From Obrimoposthia wandeli (Eukaryota), in NCBI GenBank assembly GCA_977020255.1, contig CDROCS010004848.1, positions 248,001 through 312,000 of the forward strand: 64,000 bases of DNA, written 5' to 3'. The notes under the pieces were generated by a model. The model saw only the letters and a program-made list of their open reading frames with translations, made no database searches and was not told where the DNA came from. Positions 27,883-53,354 of the stretch are shown one piece after another (within the stretch, counting starts at the first letter, position 1; every line of letters starts with the position of its first letter). The translations under genes and the position numbers were made by a program.

Positions 27883-27970
27883 ATGCAAGAATATATCATA
27901 GACTATGAGGCTTTCATTAACAAAAATGGAGATTATATTATAAAAGAATTATGTATTATGGATATATATC
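27883..27970 (+). pseudogene. N-terminal fragment of the DEDD/DnaQ-like Polinton ORF
   Basis: MQEYIIDYEAFINKNGDYIIKELCIMD matches IDFEAFIDNNIEFVIKELCIMD at about 50175-50240. Confidence 0.75.
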
Positions 27971-27971
27971 T

Positions 27972-32759: not shown

Positions 32760-33660
32760 TATAGCCCAGATTGGATTATGAAGTGAAATTGATGTGATTT
32801 ATTTAAGAGATTTAGGAATGGAATTTAGGAAGTTTATTACATAGAAGAGGAAATTTACGAGGTATTTAGAAGGTTATAGAAGAAATATTAATGCATAGAA
32901 TGGTTATAAAAGACAAATTGAAAAAGTGTTCAAGAGGTTTCAGAAGATATATTATAGATTTGAAGGGTTTAGAAAAGATTTAGCAGGAATGTTTAGGAGG
33001 TATCAGAAAATATAGCCTTAAAAGGCGTTTAGAGAAGTATTTAAAAGGAGTATTTAGGAAGTTTCAGAAAAAAGAAATTAAAATTGGTTCATAGGGGAAA
33101 TTAAAGGGTTCAAAGGAGGATTTCAAGAGGAAATTAGACGGATTTAGAGGGAGATTTAAAGGGATATTTAGATGGTTAAGAAAAGAAATTAAAGCCTAAA
33201 GGGTTCAAAGGAGATTTTAACCGAGGAGTTCAGAAGAGAAAATATAACCTTAAAGGAGATAAAAGGAGGATTTAACGGATATTTCAAGAGGTTTCAGAAG
33301 AGGAAATATAACTTAAATTGGTTCAGAGGAGAATTTATATGGGGAGGTTTCAGAAGAAATTAAAGGAATTTAGAGGGAGATTTAACAGGGAGTTCAAGAG
33401 GTTTCAGAAGAAGAAATTAGATGAATTTAGAGGGAAATTTAACGATGATGTTTAGATGGTTCAAATTAAAGCTTTGAAGGGTTTAGCAGGGATGTTTAGG
33501 AGGTTTTGGTAAATATAGCCTAGATAGCTAGATTGAATGAAAATAAAAGCGATGGATATAAGGTTAGTAGGATTCAGAAGAAAAAATATAGGATATATTT
33601 GACTTTGAAAGGAAATTTAATGTGAGTTAGAAGATATTTAGGTGGTTTAGAAGGGAAATA
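32760..33660. repeat. Purine-rich degenerate minisatellite
   Basis: Recurrent GGATTTAGAGG / AGGTTTCAGAAG / GGAGATTTAA words with strong G+A skew on the plus strand. Confidence 0.6.
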
Positions 33661-36283: not shown

Positions 36284-36950
36284 CTCTCCGGGCCGGGTAC
36301 ACCGCCTGCAGCTGTGCCTGGCGGCCCTGCTGACTCTGGTATCGCTGCCACGCTGTCTAGAGCGCGGTCTGCTTTACTGCAGGAGTGGTGCCACTCTACG
36401 GCAGGTGCACAGTAGTGGGCCCCCCTCGCGGCTGTACGCACTGGGATACACCGCGGCACTGCTATTTCTGCTGCAGTCAGGCGGACCTCTTCTGTGCATA
36501 TGCGTGCTGGGTGCCCTTGTACTGCGGGCTGCAACCCGGCACCATCGCCGCCATCGGCACCACTCCCCACGCGCACAGACCGCTGCACATCGCCTTGTAG
36601 TGCTCATGTGCCTCCTCTTCCTCACCTGTGAGCTGCCCGCCTTCTTCTCCAAGACACTCCGTGGACCCCTGAGAGCTGCCGGCCATTACCGAGCCGACCT
36701 TGCCCTTGTGTTCGCTGCCAATACGCTGGTGCATCTTGACTCGCTGCTCAACGTCGGTGTGTACGCTCTCTCGCATCCTGAGTTCCGCAGACTCGCGCGC
36801 TCTCATTTCCTGTGCGTAATGTGCTTGTCGCGTCTCAGCAGAGGAGGAGGTAGCAGTGGCACGCAGACCAACCAGCACCTCAGTACTCAGATCCAGACCC
36901 AGCAACAGCCAATCTCGCAGACAGATATCGCTCTTCTCAAGACCACTCGC
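36284..36950 (+). CDS. Host GPCR, exon with TM4-TM7 and tail
   Basis: TM6 LFLTCELPAFF; TM7 DSLLNVGVYALSHPEFRR. Acceptor CGCGCAG|C (36283/36284) is phase-compatible with the 21803 donor. Probable donor GTGAGT at 36951; otherwise the ORF runs to 37091. Confidence 0.8.
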
Positions 36951-38339
36951 GTGAGTACCAATCCTCTACAACACATTAGATTGAGAACCGAGCCCACTTT
37001 TGATGCAAACATTTTTATTATTCTTTATTCTTTGCAGAAAATTTCTTTCATTTATTGCGGTTTTAATTTTACCATATTTAAAAAGCTCTGATTCTCTAGG
37101 GAAACTTATTGTGGTTGTTAAACTGTGGTTCGTCTGTAGTTCGTCTTCTACATTTCTTGAACATGCAATTTCCCGTACTTTCTCAACTTTGGAAAAGAAT
37201 TTTAATAAAAATTAACTCGACTTCCGATATGTGACATTTACCACCTCTCTTCTGAATATCCAGAATTCCGAACCACTCTCTCCTTTCGCTAAATTTGGCT
37301 TTATTTGTTCATCTCTAACCTTTATTCGATTTTCTGCATTTCGTGGAATCAAATTTAGAAATGTTTCTCTCTACACACCGTTTTTATGACAAATGAAACT
37401 GACATTTAATTTTAATATTTAATTTAAAAACGTTTAATAAAAATATAAGATTTTAACAAAACCTGCATTAGCTCGTTTTGAGGAATAAAAATGCCTTATA
37501 TAAAGTGGTCACGTTTATTGAACTGGACTTCTGTTGGAACATAATTTTACCTCTAAAAATTGAGTTGTTGGATAACTTCGGTAAAGCAAAAGTTCGATTT
37601 TCTACTCATATAATTAAAATTACAAAGATGTCATCGAAATTACATTATTTAAATTCTCATTTAACTTTAATCAATTAATCAATTATATGGGATAGATTCT
37701 CTACCAAGAATTAACATAAGTGATTTTCTGGAAATTGGAAATATTATGAGACCGGAGAAAACTTAGGACGATTTCGAGTAAAGGTTCTGATGAAAACACA
37801 GCATTAGTTTTGTAAGTGTATATTTTCGATTTATTTTATATTTTTTGTATTTGTTTTAATATTTATTTAAATTGAATGCTCATAAGGTGTACGGACATTA
37901 AAAATCCTAAATTCATTCATTAAATGATGCTAAATAAAAATAGCATTATTGACAATACTATACCGAGATGAATTGCAGATTTTATTGAGTGTCGTTGAAT
38001 TATTCAGATGTTTCAATAATCATTTTGAAATCAAAAACAAAATAAAGTGAAATCGGAAGTCATAAGTCTACAAATAATTTATTTATTTACAAAACAGGAT
38101 GGCCTGCAAAATTTATCAATTCATTTATTTGTTGTTTCTTTCATAATTATAATAAATATAATTATATTTTACAAAATCTCCTAATCTGCATTTAACTTTT
38201 CAAAGTGTACTTCAATAAATTGAAATACAAACACATTATAAAACGTATTAACTTTTACTATAAATTGTTCGCAGGAGTTTTGGTTAAATTGTCCAAAAAG
38301 ATATCCCTAGTAAAATTATTTACATTTTAAATATTGATA

Positions 38340-39065
38340 TTATTATAACAGGTAATAGGATTGACAAAGTTCCCGTGTGAATAAAATATCATACTACATT
38401 ATGAAATAATTTACTTGTAGTTGCCGAGGGCAAGCCAGATATCGCAGCTGAGTCCTGGGAAGCTCATGGCTGCATGGGCACGATAAAATCCCCGGTATAT
38501 AATCTTCCTCTCCATCGAATATGTTCACTTGATTTGGTGCTATATTAAATTTTCTGAAGAAATTAAAAAAAGGATTTAAATAAATAATCCAACCTCATCC
38601 GTAGATCGAATTTTCCTGAGTCATCTAACAGATGTCTGAAACACTTTAGCAGAGTTGGGAGCAACTGTATCGTCTACGGTTTTAGCTGATGACGTGAGTC
38701 CGTCCCAGTCATCAGTGAACAACCGCCAATCATCTTTAACTAACTCAGTGATGAGATAATCATTTCTGGGGTGGTTCATGATAAGTAAGCAGAGCTGAAG
38801 TAGGTAATGTTACACCATCCTCTTCTCCATGAAACTCAGCCAATTGAGGAAGTAACAACATCCCAATCCTCAACGAATGGAGCCAAAACAGCATCATCCT
38901 CATCGGGATCCTTCTGTGTTGTCGGTACGTAAGAGATGGCAACTTCATGCTGGTCAGCTTCGAGATCGCTGAAGCGATCCTCGTCAGAGTCAGCAGCAAA
39001 CAATGCTTCCAATTGAGACCGAGGGATTAATAAACATTGACATTGGTCTTTGATCGACGCCTCAT
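38340..39065 (-). pseudogene. Second copy of the intron-containing Polinton orphan gene
   Basis: KIRSTDE|GT versus KIKTTNE|GT at the same intron position (intron 38554-38593). The next exon, CATGCAGCCATGAGCTTCCCAGGACTCAGCT, aligns with AATGCAGCCAGGAGCTGCCAAAGATTGAGCT at about 26310. Confidence 0.7.
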
Positions 39066-40399
39066 TCTTTTAATATTTCTAAAACCCCTAAACTTGATTA
39101 ATTGTATATGATACATTTTAATAAAATCTTGCACAGTAATTTAATGACGGTGGTATGGAATAGTTGGCAAACATGAGGACTTGTACACTGTCAGCAAGTT
39201 TTAGATAAGAAATATCTGAAATTTTAGAAGCTTTTCTAATTTAAATGGTAGACCAACAATTTAGTTCAATTGCTCAAATTTGCTCTTGATAGAAGTGAAG
39301 TATCCCATTTGCTTAATCTTCCAAGTCTAGCCTATTACCTTGAAGTCATAACAGTATATCCTTGTAAAATGTCATACAAAAATGAAGATAGCGAAATCAT
39401 TTTAGGACACTGAATAAGATTTTTTCAAGATTTTTTTTCTTTCCTTAAGCATCTATTAAATTTCAATGTGCAGGATTCCGGAATGTAGGCCGTCTACTGT
39501 TCGAGGTCAGATCCTGCTCCAGCACCCAATTATCGAGAACAGGACCACTGTGTTTCTGAACCAATCGACCACCATATTCAGCATTTTAGTCGCGTGACGC
39601 TTCATTCAACTTGTAAATCCCCGAGACTCTGATCAGCGCGTTTAATAGTTTTAAAATTTCAAAATAAAATTTTAATATCAAACTTGTTAATTGTCTACTC
39701 CCATGCTAAATTTTTTGTTTTAATTTTTTCTCAAATTCTTTAATTTGACGCTGATAAAAATGTTTTTTGACATATTTTTGCTATAATACATAAAAGTAAT
39801 CATAGAAAATTACGTTATTTGACGGTGATAAAAATCAAGTTACTTTAGCAAAATTTATAGTAAAAATAATTATGCTGTTCAAAAAAATGACCAGGATAAA
39901 CGATTTGAAATATAGGATCTCAAAAGGGACTTGAAATTCACCCGGTATATACGAATATCTGAATGAACTCTTTCTATTCTAATACGTGTATATACATCCA
40001 AGTGGAGTCAAGAGCAATTTTAACTTTCTTTCAGATTTTTTTTCTTTCCCTAAGAATTTATTTAATTTCCATGTGCAGGATTCCGGAATGTAGGCCGTCT
40101 ACTGTTTTTTTTCTTTCTATTTCAGTCTATTATAATCCTTAGTCGTCAAGCAGAAAAATATCCATATATGTGCATCAAGCCAACTTCATTGACGATCTTT
40201 GTCTTGCCTATCTTATAGATTATGTGTTTCTATTTCTATTTCAGTTTATTATAGCTCTTAGTCTCAGTCAGAGCGATTGAGAACAAAATGGCTTCTTCGT
40301 CTATTTAAAGCGAGTATCAAAGCTTGAACATATGATTTTGCAAATTACGGTGACGATGAAGAAAAGGAGAACAATTACAAAATCTGATAAATACCTAAA

Positions 40400-40490
40400 A
40401 CGTGAGAGAGAAGATATGCTGCCGTGAGTGTGGAGCATGCGCTGCTCCATTGTTCAACAAGCCGTGTTTTGAGGAATTTCAACTGAGAAC
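40400..40490 (+). pseudogene. Possible piggyBac C-terminal Cys-rich domain remnant
   Basis: REKICCRECGACAAPLFNKPCFEEF resembles the piggyBac CxxC..LC...CFxxYH tail. No DDE core seen. Confidence 0.35.
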
Positions 40491-41100
40491 TTCTGCAAAT
40501 TGTTTGCTAAAAATAAACATTTATATGATAAAAACGTGCATACAATCACCTTTTTTAATTTTTAAACAAAAGAAAATATTTTGGTTTATTTTTTTTAGTT
40601 TATTTTACAACTACGTGGTTGAGTTATCAAAGGAGCTTATCAACATTTAAGTATTAAATGACCTTGGCTTGGATGCGCAATAAAATAAGACAGTGATAAA
40701 AAGTAAATAAATAGGCATATAAATATTTTATCAAAAATAGTTTCAAATTTATCATGCTAAAAGTTTTGACATTGTCAGATAGTTATTTGAAAAAGGCATT
40801 TGCATTTTCATACCCAACATCGAAAATATTATATAAGATCAGAATTTTTAATTTTTCTAACATTTGCAACTGAATAAAATTTCTAAATTTATAGCTAAAT
40901 GGGTTGATCAAAAAGAAACGAGATTTTCTGTAAACAATCTTTTCTACAATTGCCTGGAAATTCGTACAGTGCAATCTCGATTAAAGAGCATTTTGAAGAG
41001 TTTATTCAAAAAAATTGCATATCTAATGGTTAATCATTTTTATCCATACATGTAGAAGTTTCGAAAATACCACATTTCAAATTGGGTTTATTATATTTAA

Positions 41101-41268
41101 AATTGCAGCCAACTCTCTAAAGATCAAAGTTGCCAAATCCAACTATGGAGGACGACGTTAACGATGGTGATGTGGGAACTGGAAATTGCAGTCAACTCTC
41201 TAAAGCTCAAAGTTGCCAAATCCAACTATGGAGGACGACGTTAACGATGGTGATGTTGGAACAGGAAA
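41101..41268. repeat. 83-bp tandem duplication directly 3' of the RT region
   Basis: AATTGCAG.CAACTCTCTAAAG...GATGGTGATGT.GGAAC.GGAAAT at 41101 and 41184. Confidence 0.92.
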
Positions 41269-41326
41269 TATTTATGGGAAGTTTCGTGTTTCTAAATAAG
41301 GCATCGTAAGGAAGAAGGTTAACAAA

Positions 41327-41432
41327 ATAAGACTGGCAAATTTCTTTATTTTACGCCAGCTTATATATAAAAAGTCCACCCAATCACATCACGCCTGGAA
41401 TCCGAAGGTGGTAGGCAAGAAGTGATGTGACT
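41327..41432 (-). promoter_or_regulatory. Two adjacent stem-loops in the RT 3' flank, with TATA-like and AATAAA signals
   Basis: TCACATCAC (41384-92) / GTGATGTGA (41422-30) plus GCCT/AGGC with a 5-nt bulge. ATAAGaCTGGC (41327-37) / GCCAGCTTAT (41355-64) enclose a minus-strand AATAAA. Confidence 0.55.
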
Positions 41433-41520
41433 GAGTGAATCAAAGCTACGAGACAAAAAGTTTAAGCCATAAAAATAACGAGAGAACGAGACATAAAAAG
41501 GGATAAGAGACACACACAAT

Positions 41521-42909
41521 TTATGTTATTGCTTGATGCATGGTTAGCGATAAAAGCACTCCATAGTCCTCTGTTGGTCTGGCATTTGTAGCTCCTGATC
41601 TGGTTGGTGCATCTGCTGGATTATGTTCCGTTCGCACGAATTGCACTCTGATCTTTTTTATTACTGCCATCATTTGAACGGCTATTAGAGTCCACCAGTG
41701 CTGAACTTTCGCTGGTATTCTCCGATTGCGAATACTCCAAACAAGCGCCAGATTATCGCATAGGATAATGTCTCCAGTGGTCGCTTTCCACATCGCCATC
41801 AACACTGCTCGTGCTTCTTGTAGATAGATGTTCTCTTCTTTTAACTTGGCAGTGAGCTCTATTCGAAATGGCTGTGTCTTGGTGACTGCTATTGTGGATT
41901 TGGTGGCATCTGTTGCCCAGACTTGTCCCGATCTCTTCTTCCACGTCCATGTGGCTGCGTATTTCTTGAGGTTGTAGTAGCAGATTTTTCTCAGATCAGA
42001 TCTCATATAATTTGTCACATATGGCCACTTGAGCACATTGCTGACGTAATTGAGGTATCCGATTGCATCATCTGTGAACTGCTCTTTTTCGATGATGTCA
42101 TCAGCAGTGTGCCATTTTTGCTTGCTGATGCTGACCTCTTGTTTTCTGAGATCAATGAGCATGCCACAATACTCGATCTTCGCTAAGGGCTTTAACTGCG
42201 ATTTTTTCCAATTAATTTGTAGGCCCCAACTATTGAAGAAGTCAGAAATCTTGCTCCAAACTAAGGCATTTGGCTTTGCCACGATGAGAATGTCATCAAT
42301 GTGGACATGTGCCAGGTCGACGATCCATTTGCCTTTCAACTGTTGTAGAATTCTGGATATAGTCCACTGCAAAATAGCTGGGCTTTGACGAAGGCCCATT
42401 GGGAGTCGCGTAAAGCGATAATACTGATCCTCATTCCAGAAGTTTGTGAGATGACGAGCTGCTTGTCTGATCTTCACCTGATAAAAGGCTCCTTTGAGAT
42501 CAATCCTGATGGCAAGCCTATCATTAGGCAAAAGCTGTAGCCTGTTGGCCAAATTCGGGATCTTCATGTGTAACTGCGGCAGGTGTGGAGTCAAATGTTT
42601 GAAATCCACAATTAATCTTCTAAGGCTAGAATTCGCCTTGGGAACCATTCTCACTTGAGAGCAAAACGGTCCTTTAGTAGATTTCTCAATGATTCCTGCT
42701 TTAAACAGAGCATGAACACATGCATTGATGTGTTGCTTCTCTTCTGTTGGCACATTGTATCGCTTTCTCTGCCTAGAGGCTTTAATTGAGGCAAAGGGCG
42801 CATAACCCTTGGTAGCCATCATACTCATCCTTCCGTCAAGATCGACGTCACTACTTAAACCAATGAAGCAGCATATGCTATATTTCCCAACATGTCCGTT
42901 TGTTTTCAA
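41521..42909 (-). CDS. Reverse transcriptase-RNase H, hepadnavirus-like/DIRS-like, uninterrupted (first ATG at 42828)
   Basis: RLIVDF, IDLKGAFYQ, LPMGLRQSP, HIDD, GLQINWKKS. RNase H WATDAT, IYLQE, LCDN, EHNPADAPTR. Confidence 0.93.
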   Translation of the reverse strand: MKTNGHVGKYSICCFIGLSSDVDLDGRMSMMATKGYAPFASIKASRQRKRYNVPTEEKQHINACVHALFKAGIIEKSTKGPFCSQVRMVPKANSSLRRLIVDFKHLTPHLPQLHMKIPNLANRLQLLPNDRLAIRIDLKGAFYQVKIRQAARHLTNFWNEDQYYRFTRLPMGLRQSPAILQWTISRILQQLKGKWIVDLAHVHIDDILIVAKPNALVWSKISDFFNSWGLQINWKKSQLKPLAKIEYCGMLIDLRKQEVSISKQKWHTADDIIEKEQFTDDAIGYLNYVSNVLKWPYVTNYMRSDLRKICYYNLKKYAATWTWKKRSGQVWATDATKSTIAVTKTQPFRIELTAKLKEENIYLQEARAVLMAMWKATTGDIILCDNLALVWSIRNRRIPAKVQHWWTLIAVQMMAVIKKIRVQFVRTEHNPADAPTRSGATNARPTEDYGVLLSLTMHQAIT

Positions 42910-42983
42910 ATTGAATGTATCAAATATACCAATTAGATGTTCAAATAGTATAAATAGAAGAAATCAGTTTATAATAATTAGAA

Positions 42984-43630
42984 ATGATTTTTTACAATAT
43001 CAAATTAGTGAATATTAAGTACAAGGGAATGGTTGTAAGTAACATTCAACACTTACCATTTCGGACTTCGAAGCCTCATCAGTATTGACTCAAGTGTGAA
43101 GGTTACACTATTATCATTTTCAAATCTGGTAATTTATTTTTACATTTAATTATAATTATAATTTAGAAACATGCAGAATAATGGGTTGTAAAACAGTGCT
43201 GGATGAAAGCAATCTTCCTTTTGATATAAAAATCGAAAGAATCCAATCAATCAGTCTCAATAGCAATCTAGAAACATCAATAAACCTAAACAAGATGAGC
43301 AAGAGTACGGATTCGGAAACTGTTTACGTGCCAGAAATCTGCCCGGGACTTCGATACGTCAAGTACAATCCACTATGCGTGAAAGCTTTTGCGAGCCGGA
43401 AGATTATGATACTTGGTGTTAAATCTTTAAATTATGAATATCTGATTGAATGTATTTTGTTTAATATACATATTCACACTTGTGTTATTTATTTCCTAAA
43501 CAAATACAAGCAAATAGTCAGAATGCTACTAAAAATAGATAAAAATAGAGACAAAGAGATCACATGTCATTACTTGCAAATTGTTGCAAAAGTTGTAATG
43601 TTACTAAAAATAGATTTTTCTGGGTTATAA
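42984..43630 (+). pseudogene. TATA-binding-protein-like gene with a 38-bp intron (43129-43166), one in-frame stop
   Basis: Repeat 1 LVNIKYKG...TIIIFKS|..CRIMGCK. Repeat 2 IQSISLNSNL...YVPEICPGLRY...VKAFASRKIMILGVKS (TBP consensus YEPELFPGLIY / LLIFSSGKIVITGAK). Confidence 0.75.
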
Positions 43631-43924
43631 ACGATATTTGATTTGCTTTATCATAAAATGGATGAAATTATTGAATTTAAAGAGGTACAGGATGCATTAA
43701 AAGATCTTGCTACAGTTATTGTCGGTGCTTTAATTAATCATATTTATTTGTAGTTTATTTAACTCTTTAGGTTACGTCATCAACTACATTTACATGAGAT
43801 GTTAAATAAAATGCAAAGATTGAATAATACTCCAATCAAATCATATGGCTATGATGAAACTGATGTTCCAATGAAATCAAACCTCGTTTAGTATATAAGA
43901 ATAAATTGACTCTGAATTGATAAA

Positions 43925-44378
43925 ATGGAGAAAAATCACAGAAAAATTAAACAAAACAAAAATAATTGAGATTTTAGTAAATTAATTATATATTGATAAT
44001 TATCGAGATGCTTTGGATGAAACTAAACTTTTTAAATCCGATTTCAATCATGTTATCAATACATCTATACTGGATAAAATATCTTATAAGAAATTAAAAT
44101 ATACTTCTGTTTTTGTAAACTCAAAATTAGGAGAAACAATAATGAAGTATTATAAACAGACTAATAATATAATTAAAGAAACTATCGAAAATGGTGGTAA
44201 GATTTTAGTATGTGGTCATTATGGTTGTTTACATGCTGCTTGCATTGTTATTGCATTTTTATCTCATTCGATGGGTGTTACTGCTGCTTCCAATCTTGTT
44301 AAAACTAAACGGACTATTGCTGCTCCTAATGAAGCTATGCTTCATCAAATATGTATTTTTAATCGTTATCATGTGTAA
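43925..44378 (+). pseudogene. Dual-specificity phosphatase-fold protein with a non-catalytic P-loop
   Basis: LYIDNYRDALD, HVIN, GGKILVCGHYGCLHAACIVIAFL, VKTKR..APN...HQI. Stop and frameshift near the N-terminus. Confidence 0.8.
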
Positions 44379-44921
44379 ATTTATTCGTTTTTATCTTTAT
44401 TAATCAGTATCTATATTAGTTTGGGTCTTTATTAGTCAGTGTCTTTATTAGTCAGTGTCTTTATTAGTCAGTGTTTTTTATTAATCAGTATCTATATTAG
44501 TTTGGGTCTTTATTAGTCAGTGTCTTTATAAATCAATCAGATTTCAGATGTATAGTATTTAAGCAGATTACTTTTTACTGCTTCTTCATTATATATACTC
44601 CAAATTATTTCAAGCAAGATATTGACAAGGCAGTGAAGAGCTTCATCTCGAAGAATGCCATAGAAGAAGATGTCCTGAAACTCATCAATGCTTCAAATCT
44701 ACCCCTGGAGGAACACATAAGAAGAATGGTGCACGACAAGGCAGTCAATTGTCTCATTCTGGGATACGATCAGAAGAAAGAAGAAATTCCAAAGAAAGAA
44801 GAGAAAATGAGCTTTTTCTGGGAGAAGAGTTTTTATTGTTTATTAGTGGATGTATTATAATAAAATATTTTAAATAGCTTTGTCTTATAAACATTATCCC
44901 GTAAAATCTAATATTTTTAAT

Positions 44922-45572
44922 ATGAACTTAAAAATAATTCAGTTAATCAGATTGTAGGTTCTATTGGCAGTGGGAAAACTCATTTTATATGTAAGTTACT
45001 GCAAAATAATAAATACTTTACTTTTAAGTTTAATAAGATATATTGGCATTAGGGAGGAGATGGAGAAGCTGGTTTAACCAGTAAAGAGTTTAAGAAAATC
45101 AAAAATATAAAAGTCATTAATGGATTCGATGATAATTGGTCTGATCGATTACAACGACATGATGTTATTGTTATTGATGATTTATATCAAGAAGCAAATA
45201 AAGAGAGTGATTTCAATAATTTATTCACTAAAATAGCACGACATCGAGAAGCTACTGTTATTTTCATCACGCAAAATCTATTTTTATCAAGGAGGGAATC
45301 ATAGAAATCGTATTTAAAATGTACATTACCTTGTTCTCTTCAAGAATCCACGTGATCAGACGGTTGTTGATTTTGTTTCAAGACAAGCTTACCCGAATAA
45401 TATAAATTTCCTAATTGATTCATTTTACAATGCAACTATTATTCCTCATGGTTACATTTTTATTGATTTTACTCAAGATTGTCCCGATGACTTTAGAGTT
45501 AGAACTGATATATTCAATCCATCAGGAATTACCGTATATAAACAAACAAAGAAACCAGTTTCTCGAAGATGA
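44922..45572 (+). pseudogene. A32/FtsK-like packaging ATPase
   Basis: GSIGSGKT, VIVIDD, KIARHR..VIFITQNLF, YLVLFKNPRD, HGYIFIDF. Contains stops and frameshifts. Confidence 0.92.
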
Positions 45573-45801
45573 TTTTTAAAAAAGAAACTGTTAAACCTGA
45601 AGTTAAAAAATTGATTAAATCAGTTTTAAGCGCAAGGAAAATGGTTGCTCAAAAATCAAATAAGAAAAGAATTGTTAATAAGAAATCTAGGAGTATTTAT
45701 TGAAATAGGAGTATTTCAATTATCTCATACGTGCACCTGCTATTCGCCGCCTAACTATTCTTAAATCATTCCCTACTTTTGTAATTGATGATTTACTTAA
45801 T

Positions 45802-46008
45802 GTGATACAGAAAATAGTTTTTAATAAAATAATTGTCAAGGCTAACATGAATCGGCACAAGAAACCTATATTTGATTTGTTTCATGCCAAAACACGAATC
45901 GGTAAACGTAAGTTGCTGTATAAGCAAAGTGGTGGATTTTTAGAATTTTTCGTACCAATTATTAGCTCAATAGTTGGTGCACTTGCTAGTAGACTAATAA
46001 AACGATGA
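45802..46008 (+). CDS. Small Polinton virion protein with a GG motif and an amphipathic C-terminus
   Basis: KQSGGFLEFFVPIISSIVGALASRL, the typical QxGGF + helix motif of Maverick small structural ORFs. Confidence 0.55.
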   Translation: MIQKIVFNKIIVKANMNRHKKPIFDLFHAKTRIGKRKLLYKQSGGFLEFFVPIISSIVGALASRLIKR

Positions 46009-46105
46009 TTATAAACATAAATTTGAATCAATAATATGAATTTATATATGGGATCACTTCCATCTATTCCTAAATTAAATATAAAAATCAAATCGTTTTG
46101 TTGTA

Positions 46106-47134
46106 ATGGAGAAAATATGGTTCGATCCAAGTCATCCCGTTGGTTACACAGGAGTTTCAAAATTAGCAAAAGAGACAAAGAAAGGGAAAAAGGAAACTCA
46201 GGCGTGGTTGAGAAATCAATTAGCTTACAGCTTAAACAAACCAATGATACGTCAGTTCCCAACGAGATCATACAAAACGAGCGGGCAAAATGGTTTATGG
46301 CTAGCAGATTTGATGGAAATGATTCCGTATGCCAGTATTAACGGTGGACATCGATATATTTTAATGATATTTGATGTCTTTAGCAGATTTGCACGAGCTA
46401 TTCCATTAAAGTCTAAGTCTGGTATCGATGTTTTAGAGGCAATGAAGCTTTTGATTAAAGAAATAAAACCAATAAATTTCCAAACAGACAATGGAAAGGA
46501 GTTTTATAATAAACATGTTAGTGCACTATTAAAAAAACATAATATTAATCATTACTCAGTATTTTACCAATATAAAACTGCTTTAGATGAACGTTTTAAT
46601 CGAACATTGAGAGATCGATTGAAAACGTATTTCACAAAGCAGGGAAATACGTCCTGGGTCACTGTTTTACCTCAAATAATACATGCATACAATCATAGTG
46701 AACACTCATCATTAGACCGAAAGAGACCCGTTGATGTTACAGATGAGAATGCTATGGAAATTCGAAAACGCCATAACCAAAGTCAAGTTGTAAAGAAACC
46801 CAATTATAAAGTTGGTGATTATGTACGTATTTCTCAAATTAGTACTACTCCTTTTATAAAGAATTTCAAAGAGAATTGGAGCGATGAAGTATTTTGTATA
46901 ACTAAAATTGATAATAAACATGTGCCGGTAATGTATTTCATTGAGGATGAGAGCAATAATGTAATCACGGGTAAATTTTATCATGAGGAATAACAATTCT
47001 TGTCTGAGAAACTAAATGTATATAGAATTAAAGAAATCTTAGAGACAAAAGGGAGAGGAAAGCATAAACAATATTGTGTTAAGTGGCATGGATATACTGA
47101 ACCTAGTTGGATAATAGCTTCTCAAATAGAATGA
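46106..47134 (+). pseudogene. Retroviral-like (c-)integrase with C-terminal chromodomain, premature TAA at 46991
   Basis: WLADL, DVFSRFA, QTDNGKEF, ERFNRTL, AYNHSEH. In frame after the stop: YRIKEIL...YCVKWHGYTEPSW. Confidence 0.95.
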
Positions 47135-48151
47135 ACTCAATGTATGTTGTATTACCAAGTAATGGTTCGCCATTAACTCAACCGAATAATACTGCTAATA
47201 CGTTAAGTATTGATTATCAAAGCTCAATCAATTTACCTGGTGCTTGGGAAGCTGCTCTGTTGGAATTTTCTTTCCATTACTCTCCTCTATCTATTCAAAG
47301 TGAAACTGAGATTGAATATATTACTCAACAAGAAGCTAATAAATTAACTGATGTGACTTTACTATTTGATAAAGGTCAAATGGATTTGGCTCGTATTAAG
47401 GCCGGCAATGATTTCACAATCTTTTTAAATAAAGAAAATCGAATTCAAATTTTAGGACAAGGGGATAATTTTGAAATAGTTTTTAATGATGAAATTGTTG
47501 CAGAACAATATGGATTTCCAACTAACTCTGATAAAGGAAAGCATGTGTTTTTAGGAATTATGGATAAACACATCAAGTATCCAATAATTACATTCAAGAT
47601 AAAAATCAGATTCACTAAGCAAGAGAGGAAATTATATCCAGTTCCCAATGATTTTCTTTTTCCCGATAGTGAAAGCTTATGTAAACATTTTAAAACAGTG
47701 TTACCAAATGTATTTGAAAACTTTAAACTAGTTAATAAATTGATTCATTTCAAATTGAAATCAAATATTGTTAAAGATGTCATGGATAAATCATTAGCCT
47801 CAATTATCGGTTTTGATGAAAATGAATTTGAAAATAAAAATAAGGTTTTCAAAGCAAAGATTATTCCTAAAATGACTAATGCATATAATCAAATTTATAT
47901 TTACACGAGTATTACTGAACCAATATTCGTAGGAGGAACTAAACTTCCCTTAATAAAGCAATTTGGGTTCAGCAGGAAAAGCACAAGTATGGTGATGTTA
48001 TACATATTCCAATTGAAAATCCAATGTATATTCCCGTGAGTTCTTCTTCTATAAACAATATTGAAGTTAATATACGTATGATTCTGGAAGATTAATTACA
48101 TTTGATTACGAAGCTAAAACAAGTTCAACGGTTCATTTTCGTAAATTATGA
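47131..48151 (+). pseudogene. Minor capsid (penton-like) protein, frameshifted near the C-terminus
   Basis: MYVVLPSNGS..QPNNTAN...WEAALLEFSF; IYIYTSITEPIFVGG; MYIPV...IEVNI; VHFRK*. Confidence 0.85.
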
Positions 48152-48488
48152 TTGATTCAAGTATAATCGATGCGTATAGTAAACCCATACAAGGAGGTGA
48201 TTTGCCTTATTTTGTGGGAAAACAGTATAGATCAGGATGGATGAAAGTGTTTGATCGCTTTGCTTTCCCACTACTCAAGCGACTCGGAAAAAAATACTTT
48301 TCTAGTGATTAGAAATTTCTTCCCACACTAAAGGATGCAGCCTTGGATCAGGTGAATGAAATTTCTCCAAGTCTAGCTGAATATTTGAAAAAGAAAACTC
48401 AAAAAGGAAGTGGTTATAAACGTAAGAAAACATCTAAAGTATTGGGTATAAAGAAACGTTTGAAACTAGGTGGAACAATTTTAAGTAA
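48148..48488 (+). pseudogene. Small basic core-like virion protein
   Basis: IQGGDLPYFVGKQYRSGW...FPLLKRLG and a Lys-rich tail, located between penton and MCP. Confidence 0.55.
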
Positions 48489-49717
48489 TGAGTTGTGCTA
48501 AAACTGAATTGTGTATGTTTGATAAACCTATACCTCAGGTTGTGGTTGATAGTGCTAGTTTTGAAGAAATACTTCCGACAAATACAGTTAACGGGACATC
48601 TTCTCCGGATTTAGAATTCAATATTAATGGATCCAATACTCAATATCTTGATTTGAATGATAGTTTATTTCTCATTAAATTGAAAGTATTAAAGGAAGGA
48701 GGAGGTGATTTGGATGATAATTTGGATATCAAATCAGCTAATTTTATGTTGTATACTCTTTTCAAGGATATGATTCTCAGTCTCAATAATGTAAAAGTTG
48801 AGGGAAATAATACTAGTTACACCCATAAAGCAATGATTGAAACATTACTGAATTACGGTAATGATACAAAATTGATTAATCTTGATGCAATTGGGTTTGA
48901 TGATGATGATAAAAGAAGAACAGCTTCGATTGCGAAATCTAAAGTATTGTCACTTTGTGGGAGTCTCCATTTAGATTTCTTTAAGCAACCAAAGTATCTT
49001 TTACCCGGTGTAAGGGCACATATTCGAATGGAGAGAAATCCAGTAGGTTTTAGTGTTGTTTGCGATGATACTATTAGAGCAGCAATTGAGATTACGGAAG
49101 CAAAACTGCTGGTTCGTAGAGTAAAGGTGAAACCATCTGTACTCGTTGCACATCGAATAGGGTTGGAGAAGCAAAATGCATGTCATCCTATTAGAAAAAT
49201 TAATCTTGTTTCTCATGCTATCCCTACGGGAGCACTATCTTATTACAAGGATCAGATTTTTGGAGATATGCAACTTCCAAACTTTGTTTTAATTGCTTTT
49301 CAAAACACTTCTACCTATGGAGGTGAGTCTAAAAATGAGGTTTCTCAATTTGGACACATGAATGTGAGTTCAATTAAACTTGCACGAAATATTGATTATC
49401 AAGAATCTTATACGAATGACTTTGAAAATAATGATTATGTGTTTTCTTATGTGCAATCTTTAATTAGAAATCTTGATCATTTGGATAAGGATGCTAATAT
49501 TGGAATTTCAATGACTGATTTCAAGGACAAGTATACACTGTTCACATTTGTTCTCTCTCCTGATTTCAATATTAATCAAGCTCAAATCCCTAAACAGGGA
49601 AATTTGTAAGTAGAAATCACGTTTTCAAAAGCACTTGAACATCCTACTAATATTATAATCTATGGAGTATTCGATTCTGAGGTTCAAATTACCAAGGGAG
49701 GAACAGTACTAGTATAA
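48488..49717 (+). pseudogene. Major capsid (double jelly-roll, hexon-like) protein, premature stop at 49607
   Basis: MSCAKTELCMFDKP, LDLNDS, LFKD..LSLN, LHLDFFKQPKYLLPGV, KYTLFTFVLSPD. Continues in frame as GNL*VEITFSKAL. Confidence 0.92.
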
Positions 49718-49747
49718 ACAGAATGAAAACAATAAAGAAGATATAAA

Positions 49748-50124
49748 TGAAGTAAGTCAGTTTGAATTAATTAATTAATATATATTCTAGTTCGGACAAG
49801 ATAACAAAAAGCGGAAGAAAACTACTCGGTTCGCATTTCAATGGAGTCTACAATCTTGAAAATATCCCGTCTTTGACTCGTCTAGGTGGATAAGTAATCA
49901 TTACACATTCATCTAATTTGTGTGGTGAAAATTGGATTGCAAAAAATGTTAAATAAAATGAAATCTTTGTTTTTGACCCATTTAGGATATATTACCCTTC
50001 TAAATTAGTATCTACAGAACTTGACTCTGGAAAGAAAGTATATTTTAGTAAGAAACATTATCAAAATGTTTTAACACAGTCATGTGGACAACTCTGTCTG
50101 CTTTGGTTAAAGCATAAACAATAG
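49748..50124 (+). pseudogene. Adenain-like cysteine protease
   Basis: GENW (His position mutated), FVFDPF, YQNVLTQSCGQLCLLWL. Confidence 0.8.
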
Positions 50125-50159
50125 ATATAAACAATATCAAATAAAATTAATTGTATAAA

Positions 50160-50640
50160 AAATATCTGTTTATTTTATTGATTTTGAAGCTTTTATTGAT
50201 AATAATATTGAATTTGTAATAAAGGAACTATGTATAATGGATGTGGATGCAATCTTCTATCCTGAACACTATGTTTTTAAAATGCTACCTATATGGGGTA
50301 TGATGAATAGAAAATCAAGAAAAATAAATATATATCTCATTAAGCATTACCATCGACTAAAACTAGTTGATGGTAATAGTTATTTCAAGATACAAGAAAT
50401 AACTGAGAAAATAAAACGTTGTTGTGATGTATCCAAATCAATTTTCTATAATTTATAAATAATGGAGCTAAAATAAAGACAATCAATAAATATTTTCCTG
50501 AATTTAGAGTGATAAATTACTCGAAAACATTAAAACAATTAAATCCATCAAATATCAATTGTCCATATATTAAACATGGCGAGCATTGTGCATACAAGAA
50601 ATGCTTTGCAGCTAGTTTGGATTATTTATATATTAATGCA
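50160..50640 (+). pseudogene. DEDD/DnaQ-like Polinton ORF with a C-terminal Cys/His motif
   Basis: FIDFEAF..VIKELCI at the N-terminus, CPYIKHGEHCA at the C-terminus. Confidence 0.55.
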
Positions 50641-50816
50641 AAATCAACTACTTACATTAATCAGTAAACTATTTTCAATTCTGATTTGTTTTAATAATAA
50701 ATGAATCTGATTGGTTTAAATAATGAATTAATCTGATTGGCTTAATACTAGCTCGAAAATAGTATATAAGCAAGCCTCAATCAACAAATAACTCTCTATT
50801 ATAAACGAAATTGAAA

Positions 50817-53354
50817 ATGGTAAGTTTCTTGTTATTTTTCTGATATTTTAATATTTTTCTAGAATGGCAACATGAATAAACGATTAATGCTACGATGAGA
50901 GTCACAAGAAATGTGATTTGAAAATGAAGAGCTACTTTTGGCAGAAGTTCAAAGGACAACTCTTCTACGTCTGTCCAGTATGTCTCTCTGCGAAGGAAAT
51001 TGATTAGTTGGAGTTTGTGGCGCATCATCGCACCCATCTTCGATATTTCCAGCAACGTGGCAAGAATGCCATCTTCCAGGATAGAGCTCACAGTAATATG
51101 ACTGCTTCTCATGCTACCATTTCTCAAGATCCGGTTGCTGCTCCAGTTGCTGTTTCTTCGCCAGTTACTGCCCCAATTGCTGGTCAGTATCTACTCCAAT
51201 TGCTGCTGCACCAGTTGCTGCACCAATTACTTAGCCAATTGCTGCGCCAGTTGCTTCTCCACCATCTGCTGTACCCTCTACTATGCTTCCAGTTATGCCT
51301 CCTCCATCAACAGTTGGTATGATCCCTGCGCCGTTACCAGCATCTACCCGCAAGAGAAGTGTTATGCTCACTTCAGGTAGCTCTGTTGCGAAGTTCTCCA
51401 GGGTTAATGCTGTTAAGTGAAAAACTAGTGCACGATTGAGACATTGTCATTAGATGTTTCTAATGACAATGTCATTGATTTACAAGTTCCCGAGTCACGT
51501 TTGACTAGCTTAAGGGACACAGTCAGCAAGTTTGTGACTTGTAAGGTACAATTCGGGTGCGTGTTGAATTTTCCAATATTGGAGAAACACGTGTTTGGAA
51601 TCTTTCCAATAGAGGGCTCCCCATAGATGATGGATTTATAGATCGCTCTGGGACTATATGCTGGTCTATATGAAGATGAACGTCTACCCTCTAGCAGATG
51701 TATCTACAGCATTCCGGACCAAGGCCATTGCTGACAATGGATTGGAGCCGCTCAATTTCTTCTCCATCCCTGATTTGTATTTTACTAATTTTTTCTAAGT
51801 AAATTGTCACAAAGTAAATTTTCATTAAGTAATTTTTATTAAGTAACTTTTCACTAAGTAATGATTTTCACAAAGTAATAATAATTTTCACAAAGTAATG
51901 ATTTTTACAATGATTTTAATAATTGTTTTATTTCCAGGACTGACTTTCGCGAGTGCTTTCAAGTCCCTGCTTCGCCCGGATTCTTCTTCTGCTGCTCCTC
52001 CTGAACGAGTCGAGCTAATCCAGGATCCGGAGATGTACCGTCTCTTCCGCTCCGGGATTTGTGGGGGCATGACCTTTGTGAATGAACACAAGGTGGACGC
52101 CATCAACGGTACTGTACTTTTGTACATTGATGTAAATAATTTGTACGGGTGGGCCATGTCCCAGTTTTTACCTTGTGGTAACGTTTCCTGGGTGACTGAT
52201 CGGTTAGAGTTGGGGAATATTATTTCCAGCTTAAAATCAGCAGATTTATCCTGTAGTCGCTTCGCTCATTTATTGGAAATAGATTTATCCATTCCCAATG
52301 AGCTACATAATAAATTCGACGATCTTTCCCTTGCTCCAATTAAACAGCGTCCACCAGGGTGTAAGACTGAAAAATTATTATTAACGCATTACCCTAAGAA
52401 ACATTATGTTGTGCATTCTAGATTGCTACAAATGTATGTTAGACTTGGTGCTAATGTAGATTTTTTATACAAAGCTGATTTTGTATACAGAGCAATACAG
52501 TTTGAACAAACTAATGTTTTTTTCAAAATATATTGAGGATAATTCTCTCAAAAGAGCTGTGGCTACAACAGATTTCGAGCAGGATTACTACAAACTGAAG
52601 GTGAATTCTTTATTTGGAAAACTCATTGAGAATCTGATGAAAATAATTAACCTCCGGATTTGTAATACTCCACAGAAGCTGGTTACCTATTGCAGAAATC
52701 GATACGGACCTTATTGCAGTTATACTGGAAAATATTGTTTTGGATCGTCTTAGTTATATAGGCAAGGCAGTATTAGATTTAAGCAAACTTCGTATGTATG
52801 AGCTACAATATGAGCAGTTGGAGAAATATCGAGTTCAATTTAACTGTGACATTATAATTATAGCAGGTGACACTGTTAGTTTTTTCTTGAAGTGCAATAA
52901 TGTAAATGTTCAAGAAACATTGTTACCTGCTATGATTGCTGATGAACTGTTGGATACCTCGAAATTTTCAAAAACCCATCTGCTTTATACTACGCTTAAA
53001 TCAGCGATAGGTAAATTTAAAGATGAGGGCAAGGGATTATTTAGTTATAGGCAAGGGATTTTTCTACGACCAAAATTATATAGCCTAGAGACTACAGAAG
53101 GTGAATCTCAGATGAGAGCTAAAGGTATTAGTCTCCGACAGACAAGTATTAGGCACTCTAATTACTTAGCCGTCTATGAGAGTGGCGTTAGCGAGCGTGT
53201 ACAACAACAACGTATAAGCTCATGAAATTATGAATTTTTTACTGTAAGGTTAAGTAAAATTACCTTAAGCAGTAGCGATGATAAACGCAAGTGGGTGGAG
53301 AAAAACCAATCAGTTGCCTATGGTAACCTTTTATACCCGGACGATGTTGTATAA
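50817..53354 (+). pseudogene. Protein-primed DNA polymerase B, internally deleted, intron-containing
   Basis: LADV..F....NGLEPLNFFSIP|GLT, GGMTFVN, YIDVNNLYGWAMSQFLP, KLKVNSLFGK, GDTVS, IGKFKDE, RPKLYS, SDDKR. N-terminal C2H2-like and Ala/Pro-rich segments. Most of the exonuclease region is missing. Confidence 0.93.

What the first reader, a model, noticed from the sequence alone, without database searches (positions are those of the whole stretch)
41521..42909. Intact stand-alone hepadnavirus-like RT-RNase H lodged among Polinton genes
Seen: a 462-codon uninterrupted ORF, visibly more GC-rich than its neighbours, while the adjacent core Polinton genes carry stops or frameshifts. Its motifs lean towards hepadnaviral polymerase: RLIVDF (HBV RLVVDF), LPMGLRQSP (IPMGVGLSP), ATDAT (FADAT), IYLQE (IHTAE), NPADAPTR (NPADDPSR). 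The catalytic motif is the unusual HIDD instead of YxDD. No terminal-protein domain, gag, protease, tyrosine recombinase, integrase or LTR pair is visible. It sits head-to-head with the TBP-like gene, and a Polinton-family orphan gene lies on its other side. Known: Polintons replicate with pPolB and do not normally encode RT; hepadnavirus-like retroelements (HEART type) are known from invertebrate genomes. Inference: either a minimal retroelement that parasitises or hitchhikes on Polinton-like viruses (possibly using their capsid and integrase), or RT cargo of this Polinton lineage.
Basis: partly seen in the sequence, partly recalled or inferred. Interest (0 to 1): 0.9.

Follow-up and report, generated by a model that had tools for sequence, protein, structure and literature searches.

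The report
Truncated hepadnavirus-like retroelement beside dead Polinton
The open reading frame is real and encodes an intact reverse transcriptase plus RNase H, but it is most likely the 5'-cut-off remnant of a small hepadnavirus-like retroelement that landed about 90 bases from the edge of a decayed Polinton, not a gene carried by that Polinton.

Summary
The 462-codon ORF (41521-42909, minus strand) exists. It has an RT domain and an RNase H whose only Pfam match is the hepadnaviral type, with every catalytic residue present. It sits in a GC-richer 1,819-bp segment (41085-42903). That segment is flanked by a perfect 10-bp direct repeat and ends two bases after an AATAAA. It lacks the upstream ORF and the 200-330 N-terminal pol residues that its complete relatives have. 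I read it as a 5'-truncated, RNA-derived insertion.

Its nearest complete relatives (at most 40% identity) are compact two-ORF units of 3.4-3.8 kb that assemble as circles. They have no tyrosine recombinase, integrase or protease. One integrated relative is bounded by a 60-nt repeat running from a TATA-spaced start to a poly(A) signal.

The Polinton is real and decayed, but recognisable only from 42996 to 53327. The RT lies just outside its first gene, and nothing on the RT's other side matches Polinton relatives. Three related Polintons lack an RT, and eight loci with RT relatives carry no Polinton genes.

"Stand-alone" and "Polinton cargo" are not supported. Moderate interest.

The parts
41085..42903 (-). 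Retroelement fragment (1,819 bp): 5'-truncated copy holding the RT-RNase H part of pol plus 436 nt of 3' non-coding sequence
   Evidence: GC step at both ends. Identical 10-mers directly outside both ends. Homology to relatives starts just inside the 5' end. The 3' end lies 2 nt after AATAAA.
41521..42909 (-). Open reading frame of 462 codons plus stop. The first two codons lie in flanking DNA; the first ATG is codon 28 (42828).
   Evidence: AlphaFold model pLDDT 87.6, with residues 1-20 disordered.
42160..42663 (-). Reverse transcriptase domain (residues 83-250); motif C reads H-I-D-D
   Evidence: Pfam RVT_1 E=2e-18. D137, D205, D206 and K236 sit in columns that are invariant (D206: 26 of 27) across 27 relatives.
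41584..41934 (-). RNase H domain (residues 326-442), hepadnaviral-type by Pfam
   Evidence: PF00336 at 17.1 bits, below the cut-off of 22.4. 15 of 27 relatives match it, best E=1e-13. D334, E365, D385 and D433 are conserved.
41360..41369 (-). TATA-like box TATATATAAG, 152 nt after the pol stop
   Evidence: Same motif at the same distance (150 nt) in integrated relative L005. TATA-like boxes lie 20-190 nt after the pol stop in L001, L004, L007 and L092.
41100..41265 (-). Two tandem 83-bp repeats (95% identical) in the 3' non-coding region
41087..41092 (-). AATAAA hexamer 2 nt before the 3' end of the fragment
   Evidence: In L005 the terminal repeat ends 6 nt after an AATAAA.
41075..41084 (.). 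Left copy of the 10-bp direct repeat TTTCAAATTG (candidate target-site duplication)
   Evidence: A match this long occurs in 2.5% of random pairs of 81-nt zones from the flanks.
42904..42913 (.). Right copy of the 10-bp direct repeat TTTCAAATTG
42996..53327 (+). Recognisable part of decayed Polinton copy A, collinear with three metagenomic relatives. No terminal inverted repeats found.
   Evidence: tblastn with the proteins of L008, L010 and L093. No inverted repeats.
42996..43630 (+). TBP-like gene, the first gene of the conserved Polinton block. Broken relative to the intact 153-aa ORF of L093: 1 frameshift and 1 stop.
   Evidence: Pfam TBP E=3e-6.
44013..44378 (+). Dual-specificity phosphatase ORF; no homologue detected in the three relatives
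   Evidence: Pfam DSPc E=1e-12. The relatives' gene tables list no DSPc gene.
44924..45548 (+). Pox_A32-like packaging ATPase homologue, broken (1 frameshift, 2 stops)
46094..47131 (+). rve integrase of the Polinton (ORF 46106-46993), ended early by 1 stop
   Evidence: Pfam rve E=5e-11.
47083..48148 (+). Homologue of the 363/442-aa Polinton protein, broken (2 frameshifts, up to 2 stops)
48488..49714 (+). Homologue of a highly conserved 407-aa Polinton protein of undetermined function (ORF 48488-49609), ended early by 1 stop
   Evidence: 48 homologues at 39-56% identity.
51640..53327 (+). Protein-primed DNA polymerase B plus the 129-aa downstream ORF homologue. Broken (2 frameshifts, up to 6 stops) and most of the N-terminal part is missing.
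   Evidence: Pfam DNA_pol_B_2 on two ORF pieces.

Best explanation
The ORF is the RT-RNase H portion of a 5'-truncated, RNA-derived copy (41085-42903, minus strand) of a compact retroelement from a lineage that resembles hepadnaviruses, nackednaviruses and HEART elements.

Complete relatives are 3.4-3.8 kb units with an upstream ORF of about 280-295 aa, or a single fused ORF. Their pol ORF is made of a variable N-terminal region, RT and RNase H. A TATA box lies shortly after the pol stop.

Inferred mechanism:
- These units are transcribed into a terminally redundant RNA.
- Genomic copies are DNA copies of that RNA, running from its start to its poly(A) site.
- The window copy was reverse-transcribed from the 3' end and stopped early, so it lost ORF1 and the first 200-330 pol residues.
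- It is flanked by a 10-bp target-site duplication.

The copy landed about 90 bp upstream of the first conserved gene of an already decaying Polinton. The neighbourhood is most likely coincidental, a nested insertion in repeat-rich DNA. The copy cannot be autonomous. The ORF is still open with all catalytic residues because the insertion is young relative to the Polinton.

Shown: the anatomy, the relatives' architecture and the absence of a Polinton link in relatives. Inferred: the RNA intermediate, the way of integration and the relative age.
For: Anatomy of the window copy:
- The ORF and its domains are real. The fold is confident, with pLDDT 87.6.
- All RT and RNase H catalytic residues are present.
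- Homology to every relative begins at window codon 25-30, which is their residue 210-300. No ORF1 or N-terminal fragment lies anywhere in the window.
- Perfect 10-bp repeats abut the GC-rich segment on both sides (null 2.5%).
- The 3' end lies 2 nt after AATAAA, and the TATA box lies 152 nt after the stop.

Relatives:
- Integrated relative L005 is a 2.6-kb copy bounded by a 60-nt exact repeat. The second repeat starts 32 nt after TATATAAG and ends 6 nt after AATAAA.
- L001 and L002 are circularly permuted, with a unit of about 3.57 kb. L007 has a 30-nt end overlap, giving a 3,775-nt circle. All have two ORFs or one fused ORF and no recombinase, integrase or protease.
- In an RT tree the window protein is sister to P0001 (100/100), in a clade that includes P0002 (L001) and P0007 (L004).
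- The family RNase H matches only PF00336.
- The best viral fold neighbours are pararetroviral polymerases.

No Polinton link:
- Three RT-less Polinton relatives show the same gene order.
- There are no Polinton genes in eight loci that hold RT relatives.
- Nothing Polinton-like lies to the left of the RT.
- GC3 is 0.47 against 0.16-0.37.
- About 22 breaks occur in about 7 kb of aligned Polinton genes against none in the 1.3-1.4 kb RT ORF. A Poisson estimate from the counts gives about 0.015.
Against: - There is no A tail at the 3' end.
- The duplication rests on one copy, and 10-mers of this kind occur by chance in 2.5% of trials.
- No second copy from the same genome could be examined, so truncation is inferred from relatives that are at most 40% identical.
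- Six family members in the database are also only 411-455 aa and start with M. A genuine short form therefore cannot be excluded.
- The Polinton's left terminus was not found, so the RT could still lie inside a lineage-specific variable arm. Relative L008 has 3.4 kb of variable genes between its terminal repeat and the TBP gene.
- No named HEART, nackednavirus or DIRS sequence could be placed in a tree.
- Circular assemblies can also arise from tandem or LTR-bounded copies.
Confidence: 0.6

Rival explanations
1. Endogenous viral element. This would be a piece of the DNA genome of an exogenous hepadna- or nackedna-like virus, joined into a chromosome break by the host's end-joining repair rather than copied from RNA at the target.
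For: Complete relatives assemble as 3.4-3.8 kb circles with compact coding, like pararetrovirus genomes. The window holds only a partial genome piece. The best fold and Pfam likenesses are to pararetroviral polymerases.
Against: The fragment ends right at a poly(A) signal and is flanked by a perfect 10-bp repeat, which end-joining does not predict. Relative L005 runs from a TATA-spaced start to a poly(A) signal, as a transcript copy would. No terminal-protein or core domain was detected in any relative.
Confidence: 0.15
2. A fragment of a tyrosine-recombinase retrotransposon (Ngaro, VIPER or DIRS order) that lost its gag and recombinase, inserted near a Polinton in the way Ngaro elements insert into endogenous virophages.
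For: DIRS-order pol proteins also consist of RT-RNase H without protease or integrase (PMC12440569). The RNase H of VIPER-like elements groups with hepadnaviruses (PMC6681497). Ngaro elements insert preferentially into endogenous virophages and often occur as 5'-truncated copies (PMC8547959).
Against: Complete units of the closest relatives have no room for a recombinase: only about 190-670 nt are non-coding. No Phage_integrase hit appeared in any ORF scanned in the window or listed in the relatives' loci. There are no split direct repeats and no inverted terminal repeats. Recombinase elements make no target duplication. The Cafeteria Ngaro RNase H is of the Ty3 type, PF17919 (PMC8547959), which no family member matches.
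Confidence: 0.12
3. RT cargo or dedicated hitch-hiker of this Polinton lineage. The RT gene would belong functionally to the Polinton, or the retroelement would specifically target Polintons and travel with them.
For: The RT lies within about 90 bp of the first conserved Polinton gene and is divergently oriented to it. It is the only intact long ORF in the neighbourhood. The Polinton's left terminus is unknown, and relatives carry variable genes at this end. A precedent for retroelements targeting virophage-like elements exists (PMC8547959).
Against: Three related Polintons have no RT. Eight loci with RT relatives hold no Polinton genes. Codon composition is foreign to the Polinton. The insertion has its own duplication and poly(A)-signal end. 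The second Polinton remnant in the window has no RT.
Confidence: 0.08
4. A domesticated host gene: a retroelement-derived RT-RNase H kept by selection for a cellular role.
For: The ORF is intact with all catalytic residues amid decayed neighbours. Short forms of 411-455 aa recur in the family.
Against: No near-identical or orthologue-like protein exists among 15 billion; the best is 40% identical. Insertion marks are still visible. The setting is a repeat-rich locus.
Confidence: 0.05

Closest known systems
HEART (hepadnavirus-like retroelements of insects; Gong and Han 2018, cited in PMC12241316 and PMC12440569)
   Same: Chromosomal retroelements whose pol is RT-RNase H related to hepadnaviruses and nackednaviruses, without protease or integrase. 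PMC12440569 notes changes at conserved RT residues and calls their way of moving unresolved.
   Different: No HEART sequence could be obtained with the tools, so kinship is untested. The original paper is not held. The host here is unknown, and the best database identity is 40%.
Hepadnaviridae and Nackednaviruses (Blubervirales) polymerase and genome plan
   Same: RT followed by an RNase H that matches Pfam PF00336. A long variable region precedes the RT in complete relatives. Relatives form compact circles of about 3.4-3.8 kb with an upstream ORF that in L004 and L006 overlaps the pol ORF. Protein P of hepatitis B virus is among the best fold matches (TMq 0.60).
   Different: No terminal-protein (PF00242) or core (PF00906) match appears in any relative. 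Motif C has H in most members. The window match to PF00336 is below Pfam's cut-off. Caulimoviral and Ty3 RTs score equally well or better by sequence profile and by fold. The window copy is a chromosomal fragment.
Ngaro retrotransposons in endogenous virophages of Cafeteria (PMC8547959)
   Same: A GC-richer retroelement nested in or next to an AT-rich integrated Polinton-like virus; 5'-truncated copies lacking ORF1 occur.
   Different: Ngaro elements carry a tyrosine recombinase, split direct repeats and a Ty3-type RNase H. None of these is seen here.
5'-truncated retroposed copies made by target-primed reverse transcription (LINE-type insertions and processed pseudogenes)
   Same: 5' truncation, an end at a poly(A) signal, and a target duplication of about 10 bp.
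   Different: There is no A tail. The RT belongs to the virus-like branch, not the LINE branch. Whose enzyme made the copy is unknown.

Membership tests
Blubervirales-type polymerase (Hepadnaviridae, Nackednaviruses) | RT domain followed by a hepadnaviral-type RNase H (Pfam PF00336) | tested here: inconclusive
   The window scores 17.1 bits against a cut-off of 22.4. 15 of 27 relatives match at E<=0.01, best 1e-13, and none matches the Ty3-type RNase H models.
Blubervirales-type polymerase (Hepadnaviridae, Nackednaviruses) | N-terminal terminal-protein domain used for protein priming | tested here: not met
   The window ORF lacks the whole N-terminal region. The N-terminal parts of four relatives have no Pfam match and are not conserved among relatives.
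Blubervirales-type polymerase (Hepadnaviridae, Nackednaviruses) | Circular genome of about 3-3.5 kb with a core gene upstream of or overlapping pol | tested here: inconclusive
   The relatives assemble as circles: L001/L002 with a unit of about 3.57 kb and L007 with 3,775 nt. An upstream ORF is present in L001/L002, L004 and L006. That ORF has no core-protein match. Circular assembly could also come from repeats. The test does not apply to the window fragment itself.
Blubervirales-type polymerase (Hepadnaviridae, Nackednaviruses) | Named hepadnaviral polymerase returned as nearest relative | tested here: inconclusive
   In BFVD, Protein P of hepatitis B virus is rank 7 (TMq 0.60), behind an unnamed entry and five Caulimoviridae RTs. 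PDB holds no hepadnaviral polymerase; its best matches are a caulimovirus-type entry and Ty3.
HEART retroelements | RT-RNase H grouping with HEART1 or HEART2 in a phylogeny | not testable with these tools
   No HEART sequence came back from any search, and the paper is not held.
DIRS order (DIRS, PAT, Ngaro, VIPER) | Tyrosine recombinase ORF in the element | tested here: not met
   No Phage_integrase hit was found in 37 window ORFs scanned or in the relatives' loci. Complete relatives leave only about 190-670 nt non-coding.
DIRS order (DIRS, PAT, Ngaro, VIPER) | Inverted terminal repeats with an internal complementary region, or split direct repeats | tested here: not met
   The window copy has only an adjacent 83-bp tandem pair and no inverted repeats. 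L005 has a simple 60-nt terminal direct repeat.
DIRS order (DIRS, PAT, Ngaro, VIPER) | Methyltransferase-like domain after RNase H (DIRS and PAT groups) | tested here: not met
   The pol ORFs of 27 relatives end 0-55 residues after the RNase H.
Ty3/Gypsy LTR retrotransposons (Metaviridae) | Protease and integrase in pol, Ty3-type RNase H, LTR pair | tested here: not met
   None of these Pfam domains occurs in the ORF or in 27 relatives, and there is no LTR pair. Ty3 RT is nevertheless the best solved-structure match by sequence.
Polinton/Maverick (the neighbour) | Protein-primed polymerase B, rve integrase and packaging ATPase in a conserved order | tested here: met
   Pfam hits and collinearity with L008, L010 and L093 from 42996 to 53327.
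Polinton/Maverick (the neighbour) | Terminal inverted repeats that would show whether the RT lies inside | tested here: not met
   No inverted repeat brackets copy A. Relative L008 does have them.
RNA-derived, target-primed insertion | 5' truncation, target-site duplication, 3' end at the poly(A) site with an A tail | tested here: inconclusive
   Truncation is met. A 10-bp perfect repeat is present, with a null of 2.5%. The end lies 2 nt after AATAAA. An A tail is absent.

The most novel reading that the evidence does not exclude
The window copy and its relatives would represent an undescribed lineage of compact pararetrovirus-like elements close to hepadnaviruses, nackednaviruses and HEART, marked by H-x-D-D in motif C. 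Their chromosomal copies would be made from a terminally redundant RNA by a target-primed route. That would explain how HEART-like elements move, which PMC12440569 calls unresolved. The lineage might also prefer the ends of integrated Polintons as landing sites.
Probability: 0.2. Interest if true: 0.7.

Novelty: new member of a known kind. Interest (0 to 1): 0.45.

Why it matters
Retroelements close to hepadnaviruses are rare and poorly sampled, and the way they enter chromosomes is unresolved (PMC12440569). This copy and the integrated relative L005 give concrete anatomy to work from. Both end at a poly(A) signal. The window copy is cut off at its 5' end and flanked by a 10-bp duplication. 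L005 is bounded by a repeat that runs from the predicted transcript start to its end. Together with circular 3.4-3.8 kb relatives in environmental data, this offers a testable, purely descriptive picture linking episome-like units to chromosomal copies.

For Polinton biology the result is negative but useful. The RT is not evidence that Polintons carry reverse transcriptase.

Tried and rejected
Searches for relatives and for the source genome:
- Exact look-up of the ORF from its three candidate ATG starts found nothing in the collection.
- The word-indexed protein search gave only 5 hits. The profile version was swamped by Ty3-like candidates and returned no named hepadnaviral or DIRS protein.
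- Scans of metagenome and viral contigs with the single protein found nothing. The broader alignments (A1, A4) were too diverse for pattern search. A narrower alignment (A5) returned 80 loci at 21-32% identity over the RT only, judged to be mostly ordinary LTR elements, and these were not used.
- The IMG/VR scan for the Polinton's 407-aa protein found nothing.
- The large multi-RT proteins high in the hit list are Ty3-type chimeras from a pseudoscorpion assembly, not relatives.

Searches for Polinton ends:
- Whole-window repeats, a low-stringency inverted-repeat search and a short-word BLAST against the terminal repeats of the other element in the window all failed to find Polinton termini beside the RT.
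- I looked for the N-terminal half of the TBP gene of the second Polinton remnant beyond the nested element, to measure the gene-to-terminus distance. It was not found.

Other checks:
- Rfam and tRNA scans of the window found no matches.
- The bacterial-type promoter and terminator scan is irrelevant for a eukaryotic locus.
- The host organism could not be identified.
- dN/dS was not attempted because the closest relative is only 40% identical.
- My test of outgroup monophyly was flawed by the rooting and is not used.
Full report
**Observation**

The ORF listing gives an ORF at 41521..42909 on the minus strand, 462 codons from a TTG; the translation is. The first in-frame ATG is codon 28. The segment 41100-42880 has GC 0.42-0.46 against 0.25-0.30 on both sides.

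Pfam finds RVT_1 (E=2e-18, residues 83-250). It also finds a weak match to the hepadnaviral C-terminal polymerase model PF00336: 17.1 bits, below the cut-off of 22.4, residues 326-442. Among solved structures the best sequence matches are Ty3 RT, a caulimovirus-type polyprotein and foamy-virus Pol.

In an alignment with 26 relatives the catalytic positions are invariant or nearly so. These are RT D137, D205, D206 and K236, and RNase H D334, E365, D385 and D433. The H-I-D-D motif is not an oddity of this copy. H occupies that column in 15 of 27 family members and Y in 10.

An AlphaFold model built on that alignment is confident (pLDDT 87.6, pTM 0.83). Only residues 1-20 and 443-462 are disordered.

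**The copy is cut off at its 5' end**

A full HMMER pass over 1.84 billion representatives found only 10 proteins below 1e-30, and the best is 40% identical. Relatives that span both RT and RNase H are mostly 520-725 aa, and they end 0-55 residues after the RNase H. Relatives of 607 aa or more carry 200-330 residues before the point where homology with the window ORF begins. In the nearest clade the figure is about 190-280.

In tblastn, homology of every relative starts at about window 42830-42870, which corresponds to their residue 210-300. No further piece of pol or of the upstream ORF lies anywhere in the 64 kb. These N-terminal regions are not conserved in sequence among relatives and have no Pfam match.

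Six family members are also only 411-455 aa and start with M. A genuine short form therefore cannot be excluded.

**Edges of the insertion**

Read on the minus strand, the GC-rich segment is directly preceded by CAATTTGAAA (42913-42904). It ends ...AATAAA CC and is followed by the same CAATTTGAAA (41084-41075). The inserted segment is therefore 41085-42903, 1,819 bp, flanked by a perfect 10-bp direct repeat. The mechanical TTG start codon lies in the flank.

A direct match this long occurs in 2.5% of random pairs of 81-nt zones taken from the local AT-rich flanks. The 3' non-coding part holds a TATATATAAG 152 nt after the stop, two tandem 83-bp repeats, and the terminal AATAAA. There is no A tail.

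**What the relatives look like**

- L001 and L002 are the same element from two samples. The sequence after the pol stop of L001 continues into the sequence before ORF1 of L002, so the unit is circularly permuted at about 3.57 kb. It has a 295-aa ORF and a 725-aa pol, and only about 190 nt are non-coding.
- L007 has identical 30-nt ends, giving a 3,775-nt circle with one 1,033-aa ORF.
- L004 and L006 show an upstream ORF overlapping the pol ORF.
- None of these has a recombinase, integrase or protease domain.
- Other relatives sit in eukaryote-like contigs.
- In L005 a 2.6-kb copy lies between exons of a DEAD-box helicase gene and is bounded by a 60-nt exact direct repeat. The second repeat begins 32 nt after a TATATAAG, which itself lies 150 nt after the end of pol homology. 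It ends 6 nt after an AATAAA. That is what a DNA copy of a terminally redundant transcript would look like.
- TATA-like boxes 20-190 nt after the pol stop also occur in L001, L004, L007 and L092.
- In a neighbour-joining tree of the RT domain the window protein is sister to P0001 in 100 of 100 resamplings. It sits in a small clade with P0006, P0010, P0041, P0007 (L004) and P0002 (L001).

**Classification**

- The family RNase H matches only PF00336: 15 of 27 members, best 1e-13. It never matches the Ty3-type models. With a family RNase H profile, 47 of the top 150 hits carry this type, and their ORFs rarely exceed about 730 aa.
- A profile search of PDB ranks a caulimovirus-type entry and Ty3 first. 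PDB returned no hepadnaviral polymerase.
- Against predicted viral structures the best match is an unnamed 634-aa entry (TMq 0.68). Caulimoviridae RTs follow, and Protein P of hepatitis B virus is at rank 7 (TMq 0.60). Retroviral Pols rank lower.
- Published trees leave these groups poorly resolved. HEART relates to hepadnaviruses and nackednaviruses, DIRS is not reliably monophyletic (PMC12440569), and the RNase H of VIPER-like elements groups with hepadnaviruses (PMC6681497).

I could not obtain HEART, nackednavirus or DIRS sequences, so the lineage name stays provisional. I had hepatitis B virus Protein P and nackednavirus polymerases in mind as comparators. They came back only through Pfam PF00336 and the BFVD list, and I used no letters from memory.

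**The Polinton**

The neighbours carry TBP, DSPc, rve and DNA_pol_B_2 domains. The 373-aa ORF has 48 homologues at 39-56% identity. Three long contigs that carry it (L008, L010, L093) share one gene order: TBP gene, Pox_A32-like ATPase, small ORFs, rve, a 363/442-aa protein, a 110-aa protein, the 407-aa protein, and further on polymerase B. L008 has terminal inverted repeats.

The window is collinear with them from 42996 to 53327. Counted against those relatives, the breaks are:

| Gene | Frameshifts | Stops | Other |
|---|---|---|---|
| TBP gene | 1 | 1 | |
| ATPase | 1 | 2 | |
| rve integrase | 0 | 1 | |
| 363/442-aa protein | 2 | up to 2 | |
| 110-aa protein | 0 | 1 | |
| 407-aa protein | 0 | 1 | |
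| 100-aa protein | 0 | 2 | |
| Polymerase B with its 129-aa neighbour | 2 | up to 6 | most of the N-terminal part missing |

That is about 22 breaks in about 7 kb of aligned genes, against none in the 1.3-1.4 kb RT ORF. My Poisson estimate is about 0.015.

**Is the RT inside the Polinton?**

- The TBP gene starts about 90 bp from the insertion edge.
- To the left of the RT (37100-41099), and to the right of 53327, nothing matches the relatives by tblastn or tblastx.
- No inverted repeats bracket the block.
- None of the three relatives has an RT.
- None of eight loci with RT relatives has a Polinton gene.
- The second Polinton remnant in the window has no RT.
- RT GC3 (0.47) is foreign to the Polinton ORFs (0.16-0.37).

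The RT is therefore adjacent to a Polinton, not demonstrably within it. L008 shows that this end can carry 3.4 kb of variable genes, so I cannot exclude that the RT lies inside a variable arm.

**Explanation and rivals**

The best reading (0.6) is a young, 5'-truncated, RNA-derived copy of a compact hepadnavirus-like retroelement that landed beside a decayed Polinton by chance. The rivals are:
- a DNA-derived endogenous viral fragment (0.15);
- a recombinase-retrotransposon fragment (0.12);
- Polinton cargo or a dedicated hitch-hiker (0.08), for which the Ngaro-virophage association gives a precedent (PMC8547959);
- a domesticated gene (0.05).

One search printed the coordinates of individual tblastn segments for the broken Polinton genes. 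These bracket where reading frames change. From then on I printed counts and outer bounds only.

No repaired, joined or consensus sequence was built. Consensus lines printed by the alignment tool were not used.

Noticed in passing
window 29857-35584: A 5.7-kb element with terminal inverted repeats of about 550 bp (96-99% identical). Masked N runs lie inside both arms (30090-30345, 35011-35357). It holds a fragment homologous to the C-terminal end of polymerase B and the 129-aa ORF (30918-31343, minus strand) and internal tandem repeats near 32900-33500. It looks like an internally deleted Polinton derivative.
   Followed up: partly
window 25245-35814: A second, deleted Polinton remnant on the minus strand (27950-29817) holds pieces of the TBP gene, ATPase, integrase end and the 363-aa protein. 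It abuts the 5.7-kb element. Extra copies of that element's outer repeat end at 25245-25330 and 35696-35814 pair at 91%, which suggests an outer element into which the 5.7-kb element is nested.
   Followed up: partly
window 9168-9430: A short fragment homologous to the C-terminal part of the 407-aa Polinton protein, a third Polinton trace in the window.
   Followed up: no
window 44013-44535: A dual-specificity phosphatase ORF (Pfam DSPc, E=1e-12) lies between the TBP gene and the ATPase of the Polinton. No homologue was detected in the three relatives. It is followed by a tandem array with a 16-nt period (44364-44535).
   Followed up: partly
window 21292-21846 and 36246-37091: Two ORFs with GC 0.56-0.58 (GC3 0.60-0.64) in a window of about 30% GC. 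The second has a sub-threshold match to rhodopsin-type 7TM receptors (22.9 bits, cut-off 30.5). They are not similar to each other.
   Followed up: partly
window 550-1044 and 19566-19779: Tandem repeats: three copies of 165 bp and two copies of 107 bp.
   Followed up: no
window 39420-39501 and 40025-40106: An 82-nt direct repeat (90% identical), 605 bp apart, in the ORF-poor region left of the RT insertion. Its meaning is unknown.
   Followed up: no
L001 1-229 and 3676-3760: The contig starts with a 97-nt perfect hairpin, probably an assembly artefact. Its end joins back into ORF1 while skipping about 175 nt that are present at the start, so either a deletion variant or a mis-join co-exists with the full unit.
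   Followed up: partly
L008, L093 (ENA ERZ25039515): Related Polintons carry a MATH/TRAF-domain gene just upstream of the TBP gene. The polymerase B module is inverted in L008 relative to L010 and the window.
   Followed up: no
L092 7426-10869: Two RT-bearing copies of the family lie tail to tail within 3.5 kb on one eukaryote-like contig. The first has its RNase H in a separate ORF.
   Followed up: no
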